DNA of 63,603 bases, filler included, from Reticulomyxa filosa (Eukaryota; Protista; Foraminifera): NCBI GenBank assembly GCA_000512085.1. It is 20 parts of 20 records of this genome, joined end to end, with 100 filler letters (N's around TTAATTAATTAA, not from the genome) between each part and the next. Parts side by side here need not be neighbours in the genome. Positions count along the whole stretch, not along the records: positions 27,008 to 35,075 come from ASPP01015014.1; 19 more parts are not named here. One strand, given 5' to 3'. Below, in pieces: positions 27,008 through 35,175 of this stretch. The position numbers and the translations under genes were made by a program. The notes under the pieces were generated by a model that made no database searches, was not told where the DNA came from, and saw nothing but the letters and a program-made list of their open reading frames with translations. How positions within the stretch are numbered: position 1 is the stretch's first letter; every line of letters begins with the position of its first letter.

Positions 27008-30000
27008 TTTTTTTTTTTTTTTGAGAGAGCAACATTCAACGATATTGAGAATAAGATGGCATATGATCTATGTAACTTTATCGCTGCATAAACTGATGTG
27101 ATGAAGTCTGCAGATTCCAATAGGTCGGCATAGCAGGGCCATGTCCACGCCATGCATCTTGCCTGACACTGGGAACAGGCGGATGGATTAAGGGTGGGGA
27201 CTGCGTAAGGCTCTGCGCACGATGCAATGTTTGAAGATAATTGTGATAGGATTCGCTCGAACGTTCAATGATTTGCGACGACGATTTCTTTGGAAGATTG
27301 GAAAGAGAGGAGGATTTGGTCGAAAACATCACATTGGGGGAATCCATACTGGAAAAGGAAGCACTCAGCACATTTGTGTTTTTTGCTGCCGCATCTCTCA
27401 TAGAAATTTTATATTGTTCCTGGATTTTGGAAATGGTATGCATATCCGCCATGTCTGCGACATTGGTATGAAAATTTCGACTGGGTTGATAATTTGGTAC
27501 ATTAGTAATCACGGTTGACAATTTTTCTTTTCCATTGTTATTACCATTGACAATGTCGTCGTTGTCGTCGTCGTCAATATCATTGTCACTGTTATCATCA
27601 TTGTCATCGTCATTATCATTATTAGCATTATTATTACCGCTTTGATCCTCGTTACATTTTGCATTCCTATTGGCTGTCGCCAACAGTGGTTTGTCCATTT
27701 TCGGACTTTGTTTTTGTACCTGTGTCCGGTCGATCAAGGACAGCACATTTCTACGCTCATCAGGATTTTGGAGAGACAGAAACTGCGAATTTTCGGAAAT
27801 GATTTCCAAGCCCTCTTTCATATGACTCTCTTTGTCCAAAGTTGCTGTTTTGTGCGATAATACGTGTGTTGCAGTTGCATGCGTTTTCGAGGATAAGGTG
27901 ACCATCGGATGCATTTTGTGCAATAGCTCGGACGGATACGATCGGGTTTGCGTTATATTTGGCTGCAGTGAATAGTCGTTGGTAGTGGTGTTGTTCGCGG
28001 CGTGGACATTGTAAAGGGAATATGGTTGCGGGAGGTCCATTCTTTGGAAGCTTACGTTTGATTGTCCATGCTTCAGTTCTTGATCTCGTTCAAGCGACAC
28101 TGGAAAAACTGATCGATCGGTTGCATGCGTCCCAAAGTGATTGACGAGATTCGGATTGTAGTAACTGTGGAGCGGGGAACATATCGCATTTGTCGACGGA
28201 GTAAAGGCTCTGACTGGCGTGGATGCTTTGTTATTTTCGTACAGCTCGTGGTCGTACAAAGCATGGACGTGTGGATTGTTTGACAGTGGCTTTGGATTGT
28301 TCACGGAAGATGACAAAGAGGAGGAAGGGGGAGGGGGCGGCGAGTCTGGTGCTCGATTAGGGGTGTGAAGGAACTCTTGGTACTCGAGGTCATTTTGAGC
28401 AGGGGAATATATTTCATCACTCAACAACACTAATCCTGCAAACCCTTCCACAAGTCCACGTTGCTCGTCGTACTCTATCAAATCCTCTGTCTGCGAATGC
28501 AACAAACTATATACATGGTCGATGTCACCAACGGCCATGCCCGAGTGCACAAATTTCCCACATTCAAATGAATCCCGAAACAGGAATGCCACTTTTTTCA
28601 CCAATTTCCAGTAATACTCTTTCCATCCACCTTGTCCTTTTTATTACATACGTATAACATTTATTTTTATATACTTATGTATGTATATAATCCTTAATAC
28701 ACAATGGTGTACATTGCGTTATTGTATGTACTACGTATACATATATAAGGTATGTATACATTCAAAAGTGTTTGATGGCAAGAGACATTTAACCGTGATG
28801 GATCCAAGTTTTAAAGGTCCGCAAGTCTCGTCGTTGAAATTCGTCCAGATACTCTGCCTGTGACGCCCATCGGAAATGTAAGGGTGGATCAAAGCGGGTG
28901 GACAGAAGGCAATAATTATCTTTGGACACTGCAAAGGCAATTCGTGAAAACGGAATTCGCCGAATTCCGCCATACGTGGTGTCTGTGTCCAACCACGACA
29001 AATCCTTTTCTGCAGTTAATCCTTGCGACGATGGAGACTGTGACCATTTCATCAGCCGTTTTACAAGTGCTTCCATTTCCTCAAATTTCTTTTCTGATTC
29101 TGTTATCTTCCTTTTTTTTTTTTAAAAAAAAAAATTTTATACGTATTTTTTTAATGGTAACAGCAACAAAAAAAAAGCGACAATATAAAAAAAAAAAAAC
29201 AAACTTTGGATAGACAATGTTAATTCATTGAGTTGATAATAAAGACACTCATCCAAAAACTTGGTTAAAAATTGCAAACGATCTTGCATGGCAGGGGCGA
29301 TCTTTGCCAGCCACAATTGAACCCAAGATAACTGGTTTTGCGATACACAGCGCAAAGCGGTGGCATAATTTGGGCTCATTGTATTATTGTGGTTGTAATT
29401 ATAATTATAATTATAATTGTAATTGGTATTGGAATAAAGCCCAGCTTTTAAAGGATTGGACCATTGCTCATTGCAGCGGAACATGTCATACATGTCCATT
29501 TCATACCTCAAGCTGTCGTCGTAATATGTGTCCGTTTGAATGTATTCCAACACTTTCCGGAACATCTTCGGACAGCGATCGATAAAATACTTATTGTTTC
29601 CCATCCTTATTATCGAACTCGTATCGCCCCATGTGGCATTGTCTCCATTTGCTTCATTTTTCTTTGTTTCCGTCGTTTCTAACGTGTTCGCGCTTACGTC
29701 TTCATTCGATTGCTCTCTACATGTATACAAATAGATGAAATAATTTGACACGTGTTGTTTTTTTTTTATAGTATACGTAAAATGTTTACTTGTTTTTAAA
29801 AATGTACACCCTTTTTTTTTTTTAATAAAAAAAAAAAAAAAGATATAGATTGAAAATCGCAAATACACAAACCTTAAGTCGCTATGGGTGTGAACATAAT
29901 TTACCAAATTTCCTTTGCTTCCATTGACAAAGGCTCGCTTTTGATGGCCGATACTCTTGCTAATGTCGTGCTCCTCAAAAAATTTTGCAAAGAGCTGCGA

Positions 30001-30534
30001 TCTTTTAATGAGGTTATGTTTGGACACACAAAAAGTATCTTGTCCCAATTGCAGCACAATGACTTGGTTTTCCTTATCGATGCCGTAATGTCTTCGGCTG
30101 TTGACAACGATACGCACATTGCCATTAGTGTGGTTGACTTTGGCACTTTCATGGTGATTGCCATCGGCGCATGTTCCGAGGGCTTTCGTCCCGTTGGACG
30201 AAAAGCAGTTCTCTGCATATTTGTCACTCATGTTGCGACTTTGCTTCACTGCGTCCCTTTCATGCTCGTCGACACGGCTGAACAACTCGTCTCGGGTTAC
30301 ACTTGTATTTGATACCGCTGCATCCAATGGCAATAGTCGAGAACCGGTGTTGTCGTGGCTGCTCTCAATATATTCCACTGACGAATTGACCGTGTGTGGC
30401 GAATGCGCACCACTCAACGGAGAGTTTCCTGAATGTACTCCGTTTTCAATGCTCTCATCATCATTCTCTATTACATTCAATTTCATATTATTTGGAACTG
30501 AAATTCCGCTTTCACTTGTCGTTATTCCAAACAT
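27008..30534 (-). CDS. BTB/POZ (T1/KCTD-like) domain protein, multi-exon, with a long low-complexity C-terminal part
   Basis: IVLQLGQDTFCVSKHNL..SQLFAKFF, YFIDRCPKMFRKVLEYIQT, FLDECLYYQLNEL; in-frame GT-AG introns such as 29111-29204. Confidence 0.7.
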
Positions 30535-31067
30535 CTCTAAAAATAGCCTGGTAGATTTTTGCTTTTTTTTAAAACATACGCCCCTTTTTTCTGCAAAGTG
30601 AGAGAATATAGCAATACGTGTCACACCGTGTTTTGTTGACTATTTGCATTTGAGAAACTAATGCTAGCCAGTGCTTTCTAATTTATTATGCACGCTCAAA
30701 TATGTTGTAGGCACATGATAATGTGCAAATAAACTTGAAATTCTCAATGTAGTCATACCACATCGGATAGACAAGTTTCTCATAGTTTCCTGAGAAAATG
30801 AAACGTGCAGGCAAGGTCTTTTTTTTTCGAGACAGTGCGGTCATGCAAGTCCATTTTACAAAAATTGAAAAAAAAAAAGAGGTTTCTATTGTTATAGAAT
30901 TGGAACAACCAGTCAGTTTTGTTTTTCACAAAACCTCAGCAACTGGAAAGCATTTGAATCAGACAAAATTTTTTTTTTTCAAATTTCCAACCAAAAAACG
31001 TTTCCATTACTTCCATCAAATTGACATTTCACAAACAAAAAAAATCTAAACAACATCTCAAAATTCT

Positions 31068-34000
31068 TTACACGGTTCGTTTTTCTCCCCATCCTGCGAC
31101 AGCTCGAGTCTTGTCCTCCTCTGTCAATTTAGTCTTGTGAGGATTATAGAATGGTGCCTGTGGTTTGTATGTTACATGATTAAATTTTATAAAAATAGAG
31201 AAGTAAAAAAAACAAAACAGCACAAGAGACACAAAGAGTACAAACCATTAAATCATTCAAATTGTTTGAATGATCCAAGCCCAAGGCATGTCCAGTTTCA
31301 TGCAAAGCCGTATGATACAAAGAGATGGCGGGTTGACCTCGGATCCAAGTTTGTGGATCGTCCAAGGAGGACACATCGGTAGTGGCTTCCAACTTTTCAT
31401 CGACTCCAATAACCCATCGCTCGGCGCTGTCAAAGGTGACAAAGCCATTGCCCCCTTCTCCCAAGACGCCACCATTGCCATCAAATCGCAGAACATTTTT
31501 CTGATGCAGAGTATGATCGCTCCATTCATACCAAATATCAGCAGCGGATGACTTTTCGTCACTGCTGTCAATATACGTCATCGTTATGTCACAAGCATCA
31601 GCCCATTGCTCGGTTGCCATTTGAATGCACCACACGACTTTTTCACGATTCAAATAACCAGGAGACACCCCTTTATATTTATAAATATATATGTATTTAT
31701 ATTTATATATTTATTTTAATATATATATTTATATATACACATATATATAAATTTTTATACAAATGCTATAAGTCAAATTAGTTTTTTCTCCATAATCAAC
31801 GGCCAAGGACTGTTCATCTTTCATATCATTGTTGGAAAAGCCATCGACGTTAGAGCATCGTTTCGCATTGGTCATAGTTTTTTTGGTGACGGCATCGCCC
31901 AAACCGGTGATTTCCAAGCCGCTTGCCTTTTGAAAGTTCTTGACGGCCTGTTCGGTGACAGGGCCAAAGTCTCCGTCAATTTCGTCGTTGTAGTAACCAA
32001 AGCGTTTCAAATAGCGTTGCATGGCCGCCACTTCCTCGCTGGTCTGAGACTGGCGGTTGGCTTGGTTCAGCTCGCTTTGTCTGTCTTCAAATAGCGAGCC
32101 TGTCAACAGAGGCGTCGGCAATGGCGTGGCGGCAATGTCCAGAAACACCTCTTCTTCGTTTGTCGTTTCAAGCAACAACACTTTCACCGCGGCCTTGTAA
32201 CGCGACAATTGCAATTCTCTCAGTTTATGCGATACGTCAATGACAATGTCATAAGGGTCGCGCGTAGTGCAGTTTTCGCATTCTGCGCCGCGGCCAAAGA
32301 TACTTCGCGACCCGGCGTAGTTGGGATGATGCAGCGCCTCGTCGATCGTGGTCGGTGTCTTAAACTCGTTTTCGCTCTCTTTCGCAACGATGAACACGTG
32401 GATTTGGTAACACTTTGACTCAAATTGGTCCACACGCACCTGTGGGAACACCACCAACTGCGGAAGTTCACGCAATTGTGCTGGAGCTATTGTTTCCCAT
32501 TTCAATGCAAATTTCAAACATTGTTTTGTAATTCATTGTGTATGTGTACGTATACGTTGTTATGTATATGTTGTCATGTGTTTGTGTGTATACTACTACA
32601 CTTCCAAAAAAATTATAATAGTTTGTTTTTTTTTTTTTGTTTTTTTTTTTACAGCTTCCTCAAACCTTTGTTTATCTTTCAATCGTTTCTTGTGTTTTTT
32701 TTTTAAAAAAAAAAAAAAAAACAGACAATGGAAAAAAAAGTCAACATACGTTGGCTTGGGATTTTGTCGTATTTGTAGTTCAAATGCGCTGTGTGGAACG
32801 TGTCGATTGGGTAATAACTACTTCCGTCCTCTTTTTTGAAAGGCTCCAATGGCAGACTATTTTGTCACCCATTTTTTTAAAAAAATGCGCGGAATTTTCG
32901 CAACACAAAAACAAAAAAAAAAAAAAAATCTCTCACTCGTAAAGGTCTTTCTCAGCATGCTGTTGATGTTTTTCGAACTCCTCTTGACTGTCTGAATTGG
33001 ATTGCAAAAATCCTGCGTAGATGCGATCGATATTGCAGTGGTGCTTTGATATTTCATATTTCATATTTCGTGTTTTATGAGCAATAAGTTTGTATTTCAT
33101 CATTTCATTTGTGTTTAAAAATTAATGTTTTCGCAAAAAAAAAAAAGGGGGTGCGATTTGCTTACCAGCCAAAACACAACGTCAAAAGCGGCAACACCGA
33201 CATTGCCCATTTGTCCACCATTGCCACCGACAATGCCATGGATAGAATTATGTGGAGACTCGACAGGAGGATATGACGATGCCCATTCATTTCCCGTTGA
33301 CGCATGCATAAAGTGTTGCGACTATTGAAAAAAAAAAAAATAAAGTATTAAAAAAAGTATGTAAAAAAAAAAAAAAAAAACATGTTTATTACAAAAGCTA
33401 CAGTTAATAAAAAAACAGGGAACGTCCACCCCCTTTTTTTTTTTTTTTTTTTTTTGAAAAGCGCTCAACTGATAACAAACAATCGGAAGCTTCTTGAGGG
33501 ACCTGATACGACAAGATGGACTTTGCGATTTGTTTGTCATCTGCCCTTTTGAGTTTTTGGATCTTAAAATCGGTTGGGAAGAGATCTTTGGGCCATTCAC
33601 TGAAGCGCTTTCGAATAATGGCCGGCAATCCTTGTTCAGGATGTAGTGTCCAATCCCAGTAAGGTAAAAAGATGTTGCCATCTCTTCCAAGAGCTCGATC
33701 TGCTGCTTGCAATGCTTTTTCGAATTCTCGCAGGTACACACGATGCCAACCTTTCCAATCCAATCCAATCCCCGTCCTCTCTCTTTCATTATTCTTCAAC
33801 CACATGTTCCCACATCAAAATAAAATAAAAATAAAAAAAAACAAACCAGGGAATGTCTCTTTTCCGTGAGCACAATAGTACGGTCCTGGCAAACCATGAT
33901 ATCCAGCCAATCGAAAGTATTCGCTTGTCCCTGGTCCCGACTTGTTTTCGCACATTTTCAAAATTGCATCCATCCAACGGTTTTGCTCGCTTTCGCTCAT

Positions 34001-34180
34001 CGAACGGATCTCGTGACGGATTATCAGGTTATCTGCTATTTTTTCTTCCGTTTCTTCCGTACCTCCACTAACGCCCACCGAGGTTTTCGTCAGGCTTTTT
34101 TTGTTATTGTTTGTTTGTTTATATCTTGTCAGGTGGTGAGGATTTATTTTTATCTCAATGATATGGACAATTAGTTGTTC

Positions 34181-34211
<31 letters not shown>

Positions 34212-34831
34212 CTCGTGTATACGTATACTTCCTCCCACTTACTGGTCAGTTGGTGTAGTTACGTTTGAAACATCGCTTTTGGCTTGTGTAGCTGTAGTTT
34301 CTTCCTTTTTTGCTGCAGTGGTTCTATTTTTTTTTATTTTTTTTTTCCCACCAAAAAAAAAAATTAAAATGTACATTTGATAGCAATTTTTTTCCGTCTT
34401 AACTCTTGTGGTTCAACTGATTTTGGCTGCACATCAACTTCAGTGTCCTGCTCTACTTTTATTTGCTCTTCAGCAGGCTGTGGTGATTCCTTTGCTTCTG
34501 CTTCCTTTGTATCTGCTTCCTTTGTATCTGCTCCCTTTGATACTGTTTCCCCAGATACAATCTCCCCAGATACTGTTTCTCCAGGCACTGTCTCCTTTGC
34601 TTCAGTCTCTGCTGGCTTTGTTTCCTTTGATTCTGTTTCCTTGACTTCGGCCTCGACTGTTTTCGTTGCCGGCTCAGTTGGCTGTGTTTGGTTTTGTGCT
34701 GGTTCCTTTTCTTGGGCTTTCGTTTCAGGTTCTGCTTTTGGCAACGTTTCTACTTTTGGTGAAGTCTCTGCTGTTGGAGACTCTATTGTCTTTTCAGCTG
34801 GTTGCTGAGCTCCAGACAAGCACTGTCCCAT
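31068..34831 (-). CDS. Tyrosinase / PG-binding-like MMP prodomain / M10 matrixin fusion protein (about 882 aa, N-myristoylation motif)
   Basis: Exons 34831-34404, 34323-34243, 34094-33847, 33750-33470, 33321-33166, 33043-32937, 32856-32750, 32486-31761, 31670-31246, 31157-31068, all GT-AG and phase-consistent (2649 nt). CuA: YHG..CAHG..FPGWHR; LPYWDW; CuB: ESPHNSIH..AAFDVVFWLHHCNIDR; LNYKYD; CENC; GYY..DGDFGPVT.QAVKNFQ..GL..TG..D; KRCSNVD; HETGHALGLDH..LMAPFY. Confidence 0.88.
34488..34602 (-). repeat. 15-bp coding tandem repeats (GETVS-type and KEADT-type pentapeptides) in the acidic N-terminal spacer
   Basis: KETVP GETVS GEIVS GETVS KGADT KEADT KEAEA KE. Confidence 0.8.
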
Positions 34832-35175
34832 ATTTTTAAAGAAAAACTTTCAATGGAGTGAATCCAACTAAAAAAAAATATATATAATCTAATTTGAGAG
34901 TTTAAAAAAACTGAAAACTTTGAAGGAAAACAATTAAATTAAGACTTTCGATTTGTCGATTAATTCTTACTAAATATGTTTACATAAAAAGCAAGTGTAT
35001 ACATTTGAAGCAAAACTTTATTGTACCTCACTTTCAAAAGTTTTTGTGGTGCGAGAAAAGAACAGTTTTCTTATTNNNNNNNNNNNNNNNNNNNNNNNNN
35101 NNNNNNNNNNNNNNNNNNNTTAATTAATTAANNNNNNNNNNNNNNNNNNNNNNNNNNNNNNNNNNNNNNNNNNNN

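What the first reader, a model, noticed from the sequence alone, without database searches (positions are those of the whole stretch)
31068..34831. Single-chain tyrosinase / matrix-metalloprotease fusion: a candidate self-activating prophenoloxidase system
Seen: ten phase-consistent GT-AG exons encode an intact type-3 copper centre (6 His), the YxY core end, a fungal-type C-terminal shielding domain with CxxC, a PG-binding-like MMP prodomain, a cysteine-switch-like KRCSNVD, and an M10 catalytic domain (HETGHALGLDH plus Met-turn LMAPFY) with no hemopexin domain. The tyrosinase C-domain and the MMP prodomain lie in one exon (32486-31761), so the fusion is not a gene-model artefact. Established: fungal and plant pro-tyrosinases are activated by proteolytic removal of the C-terminal shield, and pro-MMPs are held latent by a Cys-Zn switch that oxidants or proteolysis release. 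Inference: this is two zymogens in series, where switch release activates the protease, which uncaps the phenoloxidase. That could drive melanisation or protein cross-linking (wound sealing of reticulopodia, cyst/test tanning, defence). I know of no characterised protein with this architecture.
Basis: partly seen in the sequence, partly recalled or inferred. Interest (0 to 1): 0.92.

Follow-up and report, generated by a model that had tools for sequence, protein, structure and literature searches.

The report
Tyrosinase fused to a pro-metalloprotease
This is an intact foraminiferal gene that joins a copper phenol oxidase to a matrix-metalloprotease-like zymogen in one chain; the fusion is real but widespread among protists and green algae, apparently has no assigned function, and looks lipid-anchored inside the cell rather than secreted.

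Summary
On the minus strand, ten GT-AG exons (34831-31068) are in phase and encode 882 residues. In order they give an MGQCLSG start, a low-complexity linker and a type-3 copper tyrosinase with all six His. A beta-sandwich cap domain with an invariant CxxC follows, then a three-helix PG_binding_1 prodomain ending in KRCSNVD, then a small M10 catalytic domain. Exon 8 (32486-31761) carries the cap and prodomain together.

The contig is Reticulomyxa filosa. The deposited model, RFI_18882 (513 aa), is a truncated, mis-spliced version of this gene.

The architecture is not unique. About 60 database clusters have the same three Pfam domains in the same order. They come from foraminifera, diplonemids, euglenids, dinoflagellates, Paulinella, Aureococcus, Ostreobium and Volvocales. 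A 2016 paper already drew it for Volvox. I found no functional study.

Three findings change the interpretation:
- There is no signal peptide or transmembrane segment.
- 17 of 32 members with an N-terminal extension start with a myristoylation-type MG motif. Others carry C2 or EF-hand domains, which points to the cytosolic face of a membrane.
- The switch cysteine occurs only in the foraminifer/diplonemid clade.

Self-activation (protease uncaps oxidase) remains a plausible but untested inference.

The parts
34404..34831 (-). Exon 1. Start codon at 34831-34829; MGQCLSG (34831-34811) is an N-myristoylation/palmitoylation-type motif; then an E/K/T/P-rich low-complexity linker.
   Evidence: Open frame, GTTAAG donor in phase with exon 2. 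GC 0.42-0.46 against 0.33-0.36 in the flanks. MG-type starts recur in homologues.
34243..34323 (-). Exon 2, continuing the linker (T-rich).
   Evidence: In phase, AG acceptor and GTAAGT donor. A short AKSDV..TT stretch resembles the linker of P0161. By arithmetic only, an acceptor at 34312 is also in phase.
33847..34094 (-). Exon 3. N-terminal part of the tyrosinase: first CuA His (GYHG, 33904-33893) and Cys-x-His (CAHG, 33874-33863).
   Evidence: 82% identical to P0161; these columns are conserved family-wide.
33470..33750 (-). Exon 4. Third CuA His (WHR, 33748-33740) and the PYWDW region.
   Evidence: Pfam Tyrosinase 40.4 bits; alignment.
33166..33321 (-). Exon 5. CuB H-x3-H (HNSIH, 33252-33238).
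   Evidence: Pfam Tyrosinase 26.8 bits; alignment.
32937..33043 (-). Exon 6. Last CuB His in HHCNIDR (33043-33023).
   Evidence: HHcNVDR is conserved family-wide.
32750..32856 (-). Exon 7. End of the tyrosinase core with YKYD (32777-32766), then the start of the Pro-rich linker.
   Evidence: gY.Yd consensus; linker motif P..Q|[L/M]RE.PT.
32095..32484 (-). Exon 8, first part: beta-sandwich cap domain. Near-invariant Phe in IFGRG (32301-32287) and invariant CENC (32280-32269).
   Evidence: AF2 pLDDT 89.4. VIA-align: 1js8 Z 9.9, 6jua (MelB residues 452-583) Z 7.5, 6hqj Z 6.0. C69 and C72 invariant, F63 at least 90% conserved in alignment A1.
31761..32094 (-). Exon 8, second part: ordered connector, three-helix PG_binding_1 prodomain (about 32040-31870), switch-like KRCSNVD (31863-31843), and LTYSI at the start of the catalytic domain.
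   Evidence: Pfam PG_binding_1 E 1.9e-18. ProMMP prodomain matches at Z 8.0-8.5 whose aligned model range runs to residue 219-221, past the switch cysteine at residue 210.
31246..31670 (-). Exon 9. M10 catalytic domain with HETGHALGLDH (31302-31270) and the Met of the Met-turn (31248-31246).
   Evidence: Pfam Peptidase_M10 63.8 bits. Sequence matches to MMP-20, -12, -13 and -1. Family alignment.
31068..31157 (-). Exon 10. APFY of the Met-turn, C-terminal helix, stop at 31070-31068. No hemopexin domain.
   Evidence: In phase. Matches the C-termini of P0161 and P0200. .p.Y......l...D consensus.

Best explanation
What it is. This is an intact Reticulomyxa filosa gene for an 882-residue member of a conserved eukaryotic-microbe family. 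The chain has a lipid-acylation motif, a disordered linker, a type-3 copper tyrosinase core, a beta-sandwich cap domain, a pro-matrixin prodomain and a minimal M10 catalytic domain.

Most likely working.
1. The protein is made in the cytosol and tethered to the cytosolic face of a membrane by N-myristoyl/palmitoyl groups.
2. Both enzymes are latent. The oxidase is plugged by the cap (conserved Phe, with CxxC for copper loading as in MelB). The protease is blocked by its prodomain; in this clade a Cys-Zn switch does this.
3. A trigger frees the protease. It then cuts the conserved Pro-rich linker in front of the cap, or the cap-prodomain unit. The active oxidase stays on the membrane.

Shown: gene structure, domain identities, catalytic residues, family-wide conservation of domain order, and absence of secretion signals.

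Inferred: acylation, latency of both modules, the nature of the trigger, and the protease-uncaps-oxidase step. I put gene and family identity at about 0.95 and the coupling step at about 0.3.
For: - Exon model in phase with canonical splice sites.
- Pfam hits per exon above the gathering cut-offs.
- All copper and zinc ligands conserved.
- Cap and prodomain folds confirmed.
- AF2 models the cap and prodomain as one confident unit: pTM 0.79, with block-mean pLDDT 94-96 over residues 121-150, which include the connecting segment.
- Same domain order in about 60 clusters from foraminifera, diplonemids, euglenids, dinoflagellates, Paulinella, Aureococcus, Ostreobium and Volvocales. Many come from transcriptomes with complete ORFs.
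- The intron-free contig L001 abuts the blocks at my ex3|ex4 and ex8|ex9 borders.
- MG-type starts in 18 of 51 full-domain members, and in 17 of 32 that have an N-terminal extension. No hydrophobic signal or TM segment. C2 or EF-hand domains in other lineages.
- The linker in front of the cap has a conserved P..Q|[L/M]RE.PT motif, with L, M or I at the candidate P1' position in 52 of 53 sequences.
Against: - No RNA reads could be laid on this locus, so transcription of the full ten-exon form in R. filosa itself is not shown.
- The exon 1/2 junction is ambiguous.
- The switch cysteine is absent outside one clade.
- Hemocyanin units keep their cap permanently, and latent tyrosinases can be opened without proteolysis, so a protease is not required for activation.
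- The linker motif may be conserved for structural reasons only.
- The MMP structural-zinc ligands are missing, so how closely this domain behaves like a classical MMP is unknown.
- Acylation is predicted from a motif only.
Confidence: 0.55

Rival explanations
1. Co-delivery without self-activation. The oxidase and the protease are fused so that they reach the same membrane site together and act on shared external substrates, for example trimming and quinone cross-linking of proteins. The cap is displaced by a non-proteolytic trigger such as lipid, Ca2+ or a conformational change.
For: - The Cys switch is not conserved across the family.
- The accessory modules are membrane or Ca2+ sensors: C2, EF-hand, acylation motifs.
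- One relative has a haem peroxidase inserted between the cap and the prodomain (P0241), which suggests a multi-enzyme oxidative toolkit.
- From general knowledge, hemocyanin-type caps (best structural match) are not removed in hemocyanins.
Against: - The strictly fixed domain order, and the confidently modelled cap-prodomain unit, suggest more than co-localisation.
- From general knowledge, fungal and plant relatives with this cap are activated by cleaving it off.
Confidence: 0.3
2. A secreted or surface prophenoloxidase system acting outside the cell: melanisation, test or cyst tanning, or sealing of reticulopodia from outside.
For: - From general knowledge, MMPs and most phenoloxidase cascades act extracellularly.
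- R. filosa is reported to carry a DCE/yellow-type gene (PMC6678240), which hints at melanin-type chemistry.
Against: - No signal peptide or TM segment in this protein or its relatives.
- Instead there are MG acylation motifs, C2 domains and EF-hands, which are cytosolic features.
- Family members occur in organisms with no test (Aureococcus, diplonemids, Volvocales).
Confidence: 0.08
3. Artefact or dead gene: a chance juxtaposition, an assembly chimera or a pseudogene.
For: - The deposited model RFI_18882 is fragmentary.
- There is no direct RNA evidence for this locus.
Against: - Ten exons with no stop or frameshift and all catalytic residues kept.
- Cap and prodomain lie in one exon.
- 66-87% protein identity per exon to an intron-free full-length contig.
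- The same architecture is found in dozens of independent assemblies.
Confidence: 0.02

Closest known systems
Tyrosinase-PG_binding_1-M10 fusion proteins with no assigned function, such as Volvox carteri XP_002956492 (drawn as TYR-PG-ZnMc-EFh in PMC4707469, Fig. 1a), Diplonema papillatum 'Polyphenol oxidase 2' KAJ9451471.1, and Aureococcus 'metalloendopeptidase'
   Same: Same domain order. Homology runs along the whole length that could be compared. Invariant CxxC, six copper His, HExxHxxGxxH and Met-turn.
   Different: Volvocales add C-terminal EF-hands and lack the switch cysteine and the MG start. The R. filosa protein belongs to the foraminifer/diplonemid clade, which has KRCxNxD and an insertion before the active-site helix.
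Aspergillus oryzae pro-tyrosinase MelB (3w6q, 6jua)
   Same: A cytosolic type-3 copper core with a Cys-x-His cysteine, followed by a C-terminal beta-sandwich domain carrying CxxC. Structural match of the cap at Z 6.9-7.5 over about 104 residues, to MelB residues 449/452-583. The Phe lies 6 residues before CxxC here; from memory it is 9 in MelB.
   Different: MelB has no fused protease and is activated by other proteases. The plug role of the Phe was not verified.
Mollusc hemocyanin functional units (Octopus 1js8, KLH 4bed)
   Same: Best structural match of the cap domain: Z 9.9 and 9.8, rmsd 2.6-2.8, 102-104 residues.
   Different: These are oxygen carriers whose cap stays in place. They are secreted and multi-unit.
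Minimal pro-MMPs (matrilysin MMP-7; proMMP-1, -9 and -10 pro-plus-catalytic units)
   Same: Three-helix prodomain ending in a Cys-containing motif at the same place; LTYxI start of the catalytic domain; HExxHxxGxxH; Met-turn; no hemopexin, as in MMP-7.
   Different: No signal peptide. KRCSNVD instead of PRCGVPD. Three of the four structural-zinc ligands are missing. About 20 residues are inserted before the active-site helix.
Arthropod prophenoloxidase cascade
   Same: The same logic as the hypothesis: a latent protease activates a latent phenoloxidase.
   Different: In arthropods these are separate proteins, the proteases are serine proteases, the site is extracellular haemolymph, and the phenoloxidase belongs to another type-3 copper subclass.

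Membership tests
Type-3 copper tyrosinase (PF00264) | Pfam model matched above the gathering score | tested here: met
   Exon 4: 40.4 bits. Exon 5: 26.8 bits. Cut-off 22.6.
Type-3 copper tyrosinase (PF00264) | Six histidine copper ligands (CuA H, H, H; CuB H-x3-H, H) | tested here: met
   GYHG, CAHG, WHR, HNSIH and HHCNIDR are present and fall in conserved columns.
Type-3 copper tyrosinase (PF00264) | Phenol or catechol oxidase activity | not testable with these tools
   Needs an enzyme assay.
Latent (capped) pro-tyrosinase / hemocyanin-type C-terminal domain | Beta-sandwich domain directly after the Y-x-Y end of the core | tested here: met
   AF2 pLDDT 89.4. 1js8 Z 9.9, 6jua Z 7.5, 6hqj Z 6.0.
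Latent (capped) pro-tyrosinase / hemocyanin-type C-terminal domain | Placeholder residue plugging the dicopper site | tested here: inconclusive
   The Phe of IFGRG is at least 90% conserved and sits where MelB's plug Phe would fall by proportion. No coordinates or full-length model were available.
Latent (capped) pro-tyrosinase / hemocyanin-type C-terminal domain | Sequence-family match (PF18132 Tyosinase_C or PF12143 KFDV) | tested here: not met
   No Pfam hit on the cap part even at E up to 1. A profile search against PDB sequences found only PG-binding matches.
Matrixin, MEROPS M10A (PF00413) | Pfam model above the gathering score; HExxHxxGxxH; Met-turn | tested here: met
   63.8 bits against a cut-off of 24. 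HETGHALGLDH and M|APFY present.
Matrixin, MEROPS M10A (PF00413) | Prodomain with a cysteine switch (PRCGxPD) | tested here: met
   Variant KRCSNVD directly after the third helix. ProMMP-1, -9 and -10 prodomains align at Z 8.0-8.5, and the aligned model range runs past the cysteine. Zinc ligation by the Cys is not shown.
Matrixin, MEROPS M10A (PF00413) | Structural zinc site (His, Asp, His, His) in the S-loop | tested here: not met
   In the alignment to MMP-20 only the first His is kept, the LAH segment is deleted, and the last His is Thr. No conserved His at these columns in the family.
Matrixin, MEROPS M10A (PF00413) | Secretory signal peptide | tested here: not met
   No hydrophobic N-terminus: maximum Kyte-Doolittle 19-residue window in exon 1 is 0.00. 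The MG start is an acylation-type motif.
Tyrosinase-PG_binding_1-M10 fusion family | Three Pfam domains in this order, with homology along the full length | tested here: met
   Exon 8 aligns end to end with P0016, P0044 and P0076, which carry all three domains. All exons align with the family.
N-myristoylated / dually acylated proteins | Met-Gly start with a small residue at position 6 and a nearby Cys | tested here: met
   MGQCLSG. The motif recurs in 18 of 51 relatives.
N-myristoylated / dually acylated proteins | Actual lipid attachment | not testable with these tools
   Needs labelling or mass spectrometry.

The most novel reading that the evidence does not exclude
The whole family is a lipid-anchored, cytosolic, single-chain zymogen cascade. 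A membrane or Ca2+/oxidant signal (for example plasma-membrane damage) frees the metalloprotease. The protease cuts the Pro-rich linker and uncaps the tyrosinase on the inner membrane face. That would be an intracellular prophenoloxidase-type injury or defence system conserved from foraminifera to green algae.
Probability: 0.18. Interest if true: 0.8.

Novelty: new member of a known kind. Interest (0 to 1): 0.5.

Why it matters
The gene itself is one more member, now better modelled, of a family already present in databases, so the architecture is not a discovery.

The family still matters for three reasons:
- It is widespread, covering at least five major eukaryotic lineages.
- It has apparently never been studied.
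- It joins two enzymes that each have a classic latency mechanism.

The family-wide acylation motifs, C2 domains and EF-hands argue that a tyrosinase and an MMP-like protease work at the cytosolic face of membranes. That is unusual for both enzyme classes.

If the protease does uncap the oxidase, this would be a compact, genetically tractable model of zymogen-cascade logic. Chlamydomonas relatives and Diplonema papillatum are transformable.

A practical result is that the deposited R. filosa model RFI_18882 is wrong and hides the tyrosinase half.

Tried and rejected
Only my own sandbox BLAST used the whole piece as subject.
- The look-up of sequencing runs found only small-share holders.
- The single-sequence AF2 model of exon 8 was useless (pLDDT 41). 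The run with an alignment replaced it.
- A first exon 1 donor at 34375 with an acceptor at 34323 is out of phase, and my 'model b' was mis-indexed.
- The bacterial promoter/terminator scan is irrelevant for a eukaryote.
- NCBIfam added nothing beyond PG-binding look-alikes.
- The profile search against PDB sequences did not reach tyrosinase cap domains.
- Seven literature searches found no functional study of this architecture.
Full-length comparisons used database homologues (P0161, P0153 and others).
- No complex-prediction job was sent, because a docking score would not settle the cleavage question.
Full report
**Scope and rules.** Only places 27008-35075 are genome. The gene lies on the minus strand. 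I built no joined coding sequence or protein and submitted none. Phase was checked exon-wise. Only my own sandbox BLAST used the whole piece as subject.

**1. The observation.** The minus strand from 34831 to 31068 was read. Ten exons with canonical GT...AG borders are in phase without any stop. They total 2649 nt, i.e. 882 codons plus TAA (model a). The exons are:

| Exon | Coordinates |
|---|---|
| 1 | 34831-34404 |
| 2 | 34323-34243 |
| 3 | 34094-33847 |
| 4 | 33750-33470 |
| 5 | 33321-33166 |
| 6 | 33043-32937 |
| 7 | 32856-32750 |
| 8 | 32486-31761 |
| 9 | 31670-31246 |
| 10 | 31157-31068 |

By my own arithmetic the exon 1/2 junction has a second in-phase solution (34831-34375 joined to 34312-34243), which stays open; no tool run confirmed it. 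Exons are richer in G+C (0.42-0.52) than introns (0.30-0.36).

Pfam, run on each exon's translation, gave these hits:
- Tyrosinase on exon 4 (40.4 bits) and exon 5 (26.8 bits), cut-off 22.6.
- PG_binding_1 on exon 8 (E 1.9e-18).
- Peptidase_M10 on exon 9 (E 2.3e-17).

- GYHG, CAHG, WHR, HNSIH and HHCNIDR, which supply the six copper His plus the Cys-x-His cysteine.
- YKYD, CENC, KRCSNVD and HETGHALGLDH.
- The Met-turn M|APFY, split by intron 9.

The stop follows 29 codons after the Met-turn methionine, so there is no hemopexin domain.

**2. Whose gene it is.** A database protein, RFI_18882 of Reticulomyxa filosa (P0197, 513 aa), sits on a contig of 8068 bases, exactly the length of this piece. 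Mapping it back shows a faulty model of this gene:
- It starts at an ATG inside intron 5.
- It reads through junk around exon 7 and runs into intron 9.
- It therefore lacks the N-terminal half of the tyrosinase and exon 10.

R. filosa has at least two paralogues, also fragmentary. They are P0001 and P0200; P0200 is mis-named 'NLP/P60 protein'.

**3. Support for the splice model from a relative.** P0161 (781 aa) is encoded without introns on a 2628-base Logan contig of run SRR32617133 (L001). It is 66-87% identical to each of exons 3-10 at protein level. At DNA level its BLAST blocks end at my exon borders. They abut in L001 at ex3|ex4 (512/511) and at ex8|ex9 (1887/1888).

This is comparative evidence, not evidence from R. 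filosa RNA. I could not confirm that the run is RNA. Its intron-free state, and the many transcriptome-derived homologues with complete ORFs (MMETSP Rosalina, Nonionella, Bolivina, Flectonema, Paulinella), show that the fused reading frame is transcribed as one message in relatives.

**4. Domain identities.** A single-sequence fold of exon 8 failed. With a 64-sequence alignment (A1) AlphaFold2 gave pLDDT 89.4 and pTM 0.79, and block-mean pLDDT stayed at 94-96 over residues 121-150, which include the segment joining the two domains.

VIA-align on Foldseek's candidates gave these matches:

| Model residues | Match | Z | Notes |
|---|---|---|---|
| 1-132 | Octopus hemocyanin unit 1js8, C-terminal beta-sandwich | 9.9 | rmsd 2.8, 104 residues |
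| 1-132 | KLH 4bed | 9.8 | |
| 1-132 | A. oryzae pro-tyrosinase MelB 6jua / 3w6q, residues 449/452-583 | 7.5 / 6.9 | |
| 1-132 | Tomato PPO 6hqj | 6.0 | |
| about 130-220 | Bacterial PG_binding_1 domains | 10-12 | |
| about 147-221 | proMMP-10 9csx | 8.5 | |
| about 147-221 | proMMP-9 | 8.4 | |
| about 147-221 | proMMP-1 1su3 | 8.0 | rmsd 1.5 |

The proMMP alignments run to model residue 219-221, past the KRC cysteine at residue 210. The cap is therefore of the general type-3 copper shielding kind, not specifically fungal. No Pfam cap family matches by sequence.

The M10 domain matches MMP-20, -12, -13 and -1 by sequence. It differs from them in two ways:
- It keeps only one of the four structural-zinc ligands.
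- It carries an insertion of about 20 residues before the active-site helix, shared by its clade.

**5. The architecture is common.** A full HMMER scan with exon 8 found proteins aligned end to end with it. Pfam shows that these carry Tyrosinase, PG_binding_1 and Peptidase_M10 in that order. Word-seeded searches with two full-length homologues listed about 60 clusters with all three domains.

Named sources:
- Foraminifera: Reticulomyxa, Nonionella stella, Bolivina argentea, Rosalina.
- Diplonemids: Flectonema neradi, and Diplonema papillatum, where it is annotated 'Polyphenol oxidase 2'.
- The euglenid Ploeotia.
- Dinoflagellates: Gymnodinium smaydae and Durusdinium.
- Paulinella and Aureococcus.
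- The siphonous green alga Ostreobium.
- Volvocales: Chlamydomonas schloesseri, Edaphochlamys, Gonium, Pleodorina, Volvox.

Variants add other domains:
- N-terminal C2 domains.
- C-terminal EF-hands.
- In one environmental protein (P0241), a haem peroxidase between the cap and the prodomain.

The architecture has been drawn before. Fig. 1a of PMC4707469 shows TYR, PG, ZnMc and EFh domains for tyrosinase-containing proteins including Volvox carteri XP_002956492. I found no functional work.

**6. What is conserved, and what is not.** In a 38-protein alignment with the exon translations added as fragments, the following are conserved throughout:
- the six copper His and the Cys-x-His cysteine;
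- the Y-x-Y-D end of the core;
- HExxHxxGxxH and the Met-turn.

In alignment A1 the two cysteines of CxxC are the only invariant columns, and the Phe six residues upstream is at least 90% conserved. From my memory of the MelB literature this resembles the MelB plug Phe and its CxxC. The plug role is not verified here.

The switch cysteine is different. KRCxNxD occurs only in the foraminifer/diplonemid group. That group forms one side of a branch with SH-aLRT 99 in a quick, not completed, maximum-likelihood tree. All other lineages have PR[M/F/V/L/N]D at the same place.

The linker between the core and the cap has a conserved P..Q|[L/M]RE.PT motif with a hydrophobic residue in 52 of 53 sequences. 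This fits the loose MMP preference (Pro at P3/P4, hydrophobic at P1'). It can equally be structural, so I give it little weight.

**7. Topology.**
- The protein starts MGQCLSG: Gly2, Cys4, Ser6.
- No exon product has a hydrophobic stretch typical of a signal peptide or membrane span. The maximum 19-residue hydropathy is 1.18.
- Among 51 relatives with all catalytic motifs, 18 start with MG, often with a nearby Cys (MGGACSS, MGGLCPK, MGSCAAK, MGCGSST and others).
- Among the 32 with an N-terminal extension and no C2 domain, 17 start with MG.
- These MG starts occur on both sides of the tree. Many non-MG entries start inside the first tyrosinase helix and look truncated.
- Together with the C2 and EF-hand variants, this points to a protein on the cytosolic face of membranes that responds to lipid or Ca2+.

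This is motif-level inference.

**8. Mechanism.**
- Shown: two intact catalytic centres, a cap of the kind that shields type-3 copper sites, a proMMP-like prodomain with a cysteine in the switch position, a fixed domain order conserved over very large evolutionary distances, and a cap-prodomain unit that AF2 models confidently as a whole.
- Inferred: both modules are latent, and the protease removes the cap.

I rate the coupling at about 0.3. A fusion conserved this widely usually reflects a functional link, and relatives with this cap are activated by proteolysis. Against it, the Cys switch is clade-specific, caps can open without cleavage, and nothing was measured.

The main rival is co-delivery of two enzymes to one membrane site without self-activation (about 0.3). 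Artefact or pseudogene is very unlikely.

**9. Verdict.**
- The gene is a new, better-modelled member of a known family whose function apparently has not been studied. It is not a unique architecture.
- Interest is moderate for two reasons: the family is broad and unexplored, and the predicted cytosolic, lipid-anchored setting of a tyrosinase plus MMP-like protease is unexpected.

Noticed in passing
window 31068-33103 (deposited model RFI_18882, P0197): The public R. filosa protein for this locus (513 aa) starts inside intron 5, translates intron sequence around exon 7 and after exon 9, and misses exons 1-5 and 10. Databases therefore list it as a metallopeptidase only.
   Followed up: yes
P0001 and P0200 (other R. 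filosa contigs): There are at least two R. filosa paralogues of the same fusion (59% and 70% identity over exon 8). Both are fragmentary models. P0200 is named 'NLP/P60 protein, partial', which looks like a misnomer.
   Followed up: partly
P0241 (JGI metagenome, 1211 aa): A relative has a haem peroxidase domain (PF00141, residues 694-925) inserted between the tyrosinase cap and the PG_binding_1 prodomain. That makes three redox or proteolytic enzymes in one chain.
   Followed up: partly
Family alignment, column of the switch cysteine (window 31857-31855): Outside the foraminifer/diplonemid clade the Cys is replaced by M, F, V, L or N, followed directly by a conserved Asp (PRxD). An aspartate-type latency contact, as in some other metzincin zymogens, is conceivable but was not tested.
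   Followed up: no
window 29137-30624, minus strand: The neighbouring long open frame has a BTB_2 (BTB/POZ) domain match (E 1.8e-06). It is interrupted by intron-like A/T-rich stretches and is probably a separate multi-exon gene.
   Followed up: partly
window 27078-28604, minus strand: A 508-codon open frame, rich in Ser, Asn and Asp runs, with no Pfam match. It runs to the edge of the piece.
   Followed up: partly
Introns of the gene, e.g. 33322-33469, 32487-32749, 34095-34242: The introns are full of long A and T homopolymer runs and simple repeats. One of these runs (33322-33360) tripped the read tool's filter.
   Followed up: no
Tree of the family: Diplonemid proteins (Flectonema, Diplonema) nest inside the foraminiferal sequences rather than with the euglenid Ploeotia. 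This hints at eukaryote-to-eukaryote transfer or contamination. The tree was a quick, unrooted search.
   Followed up: partly
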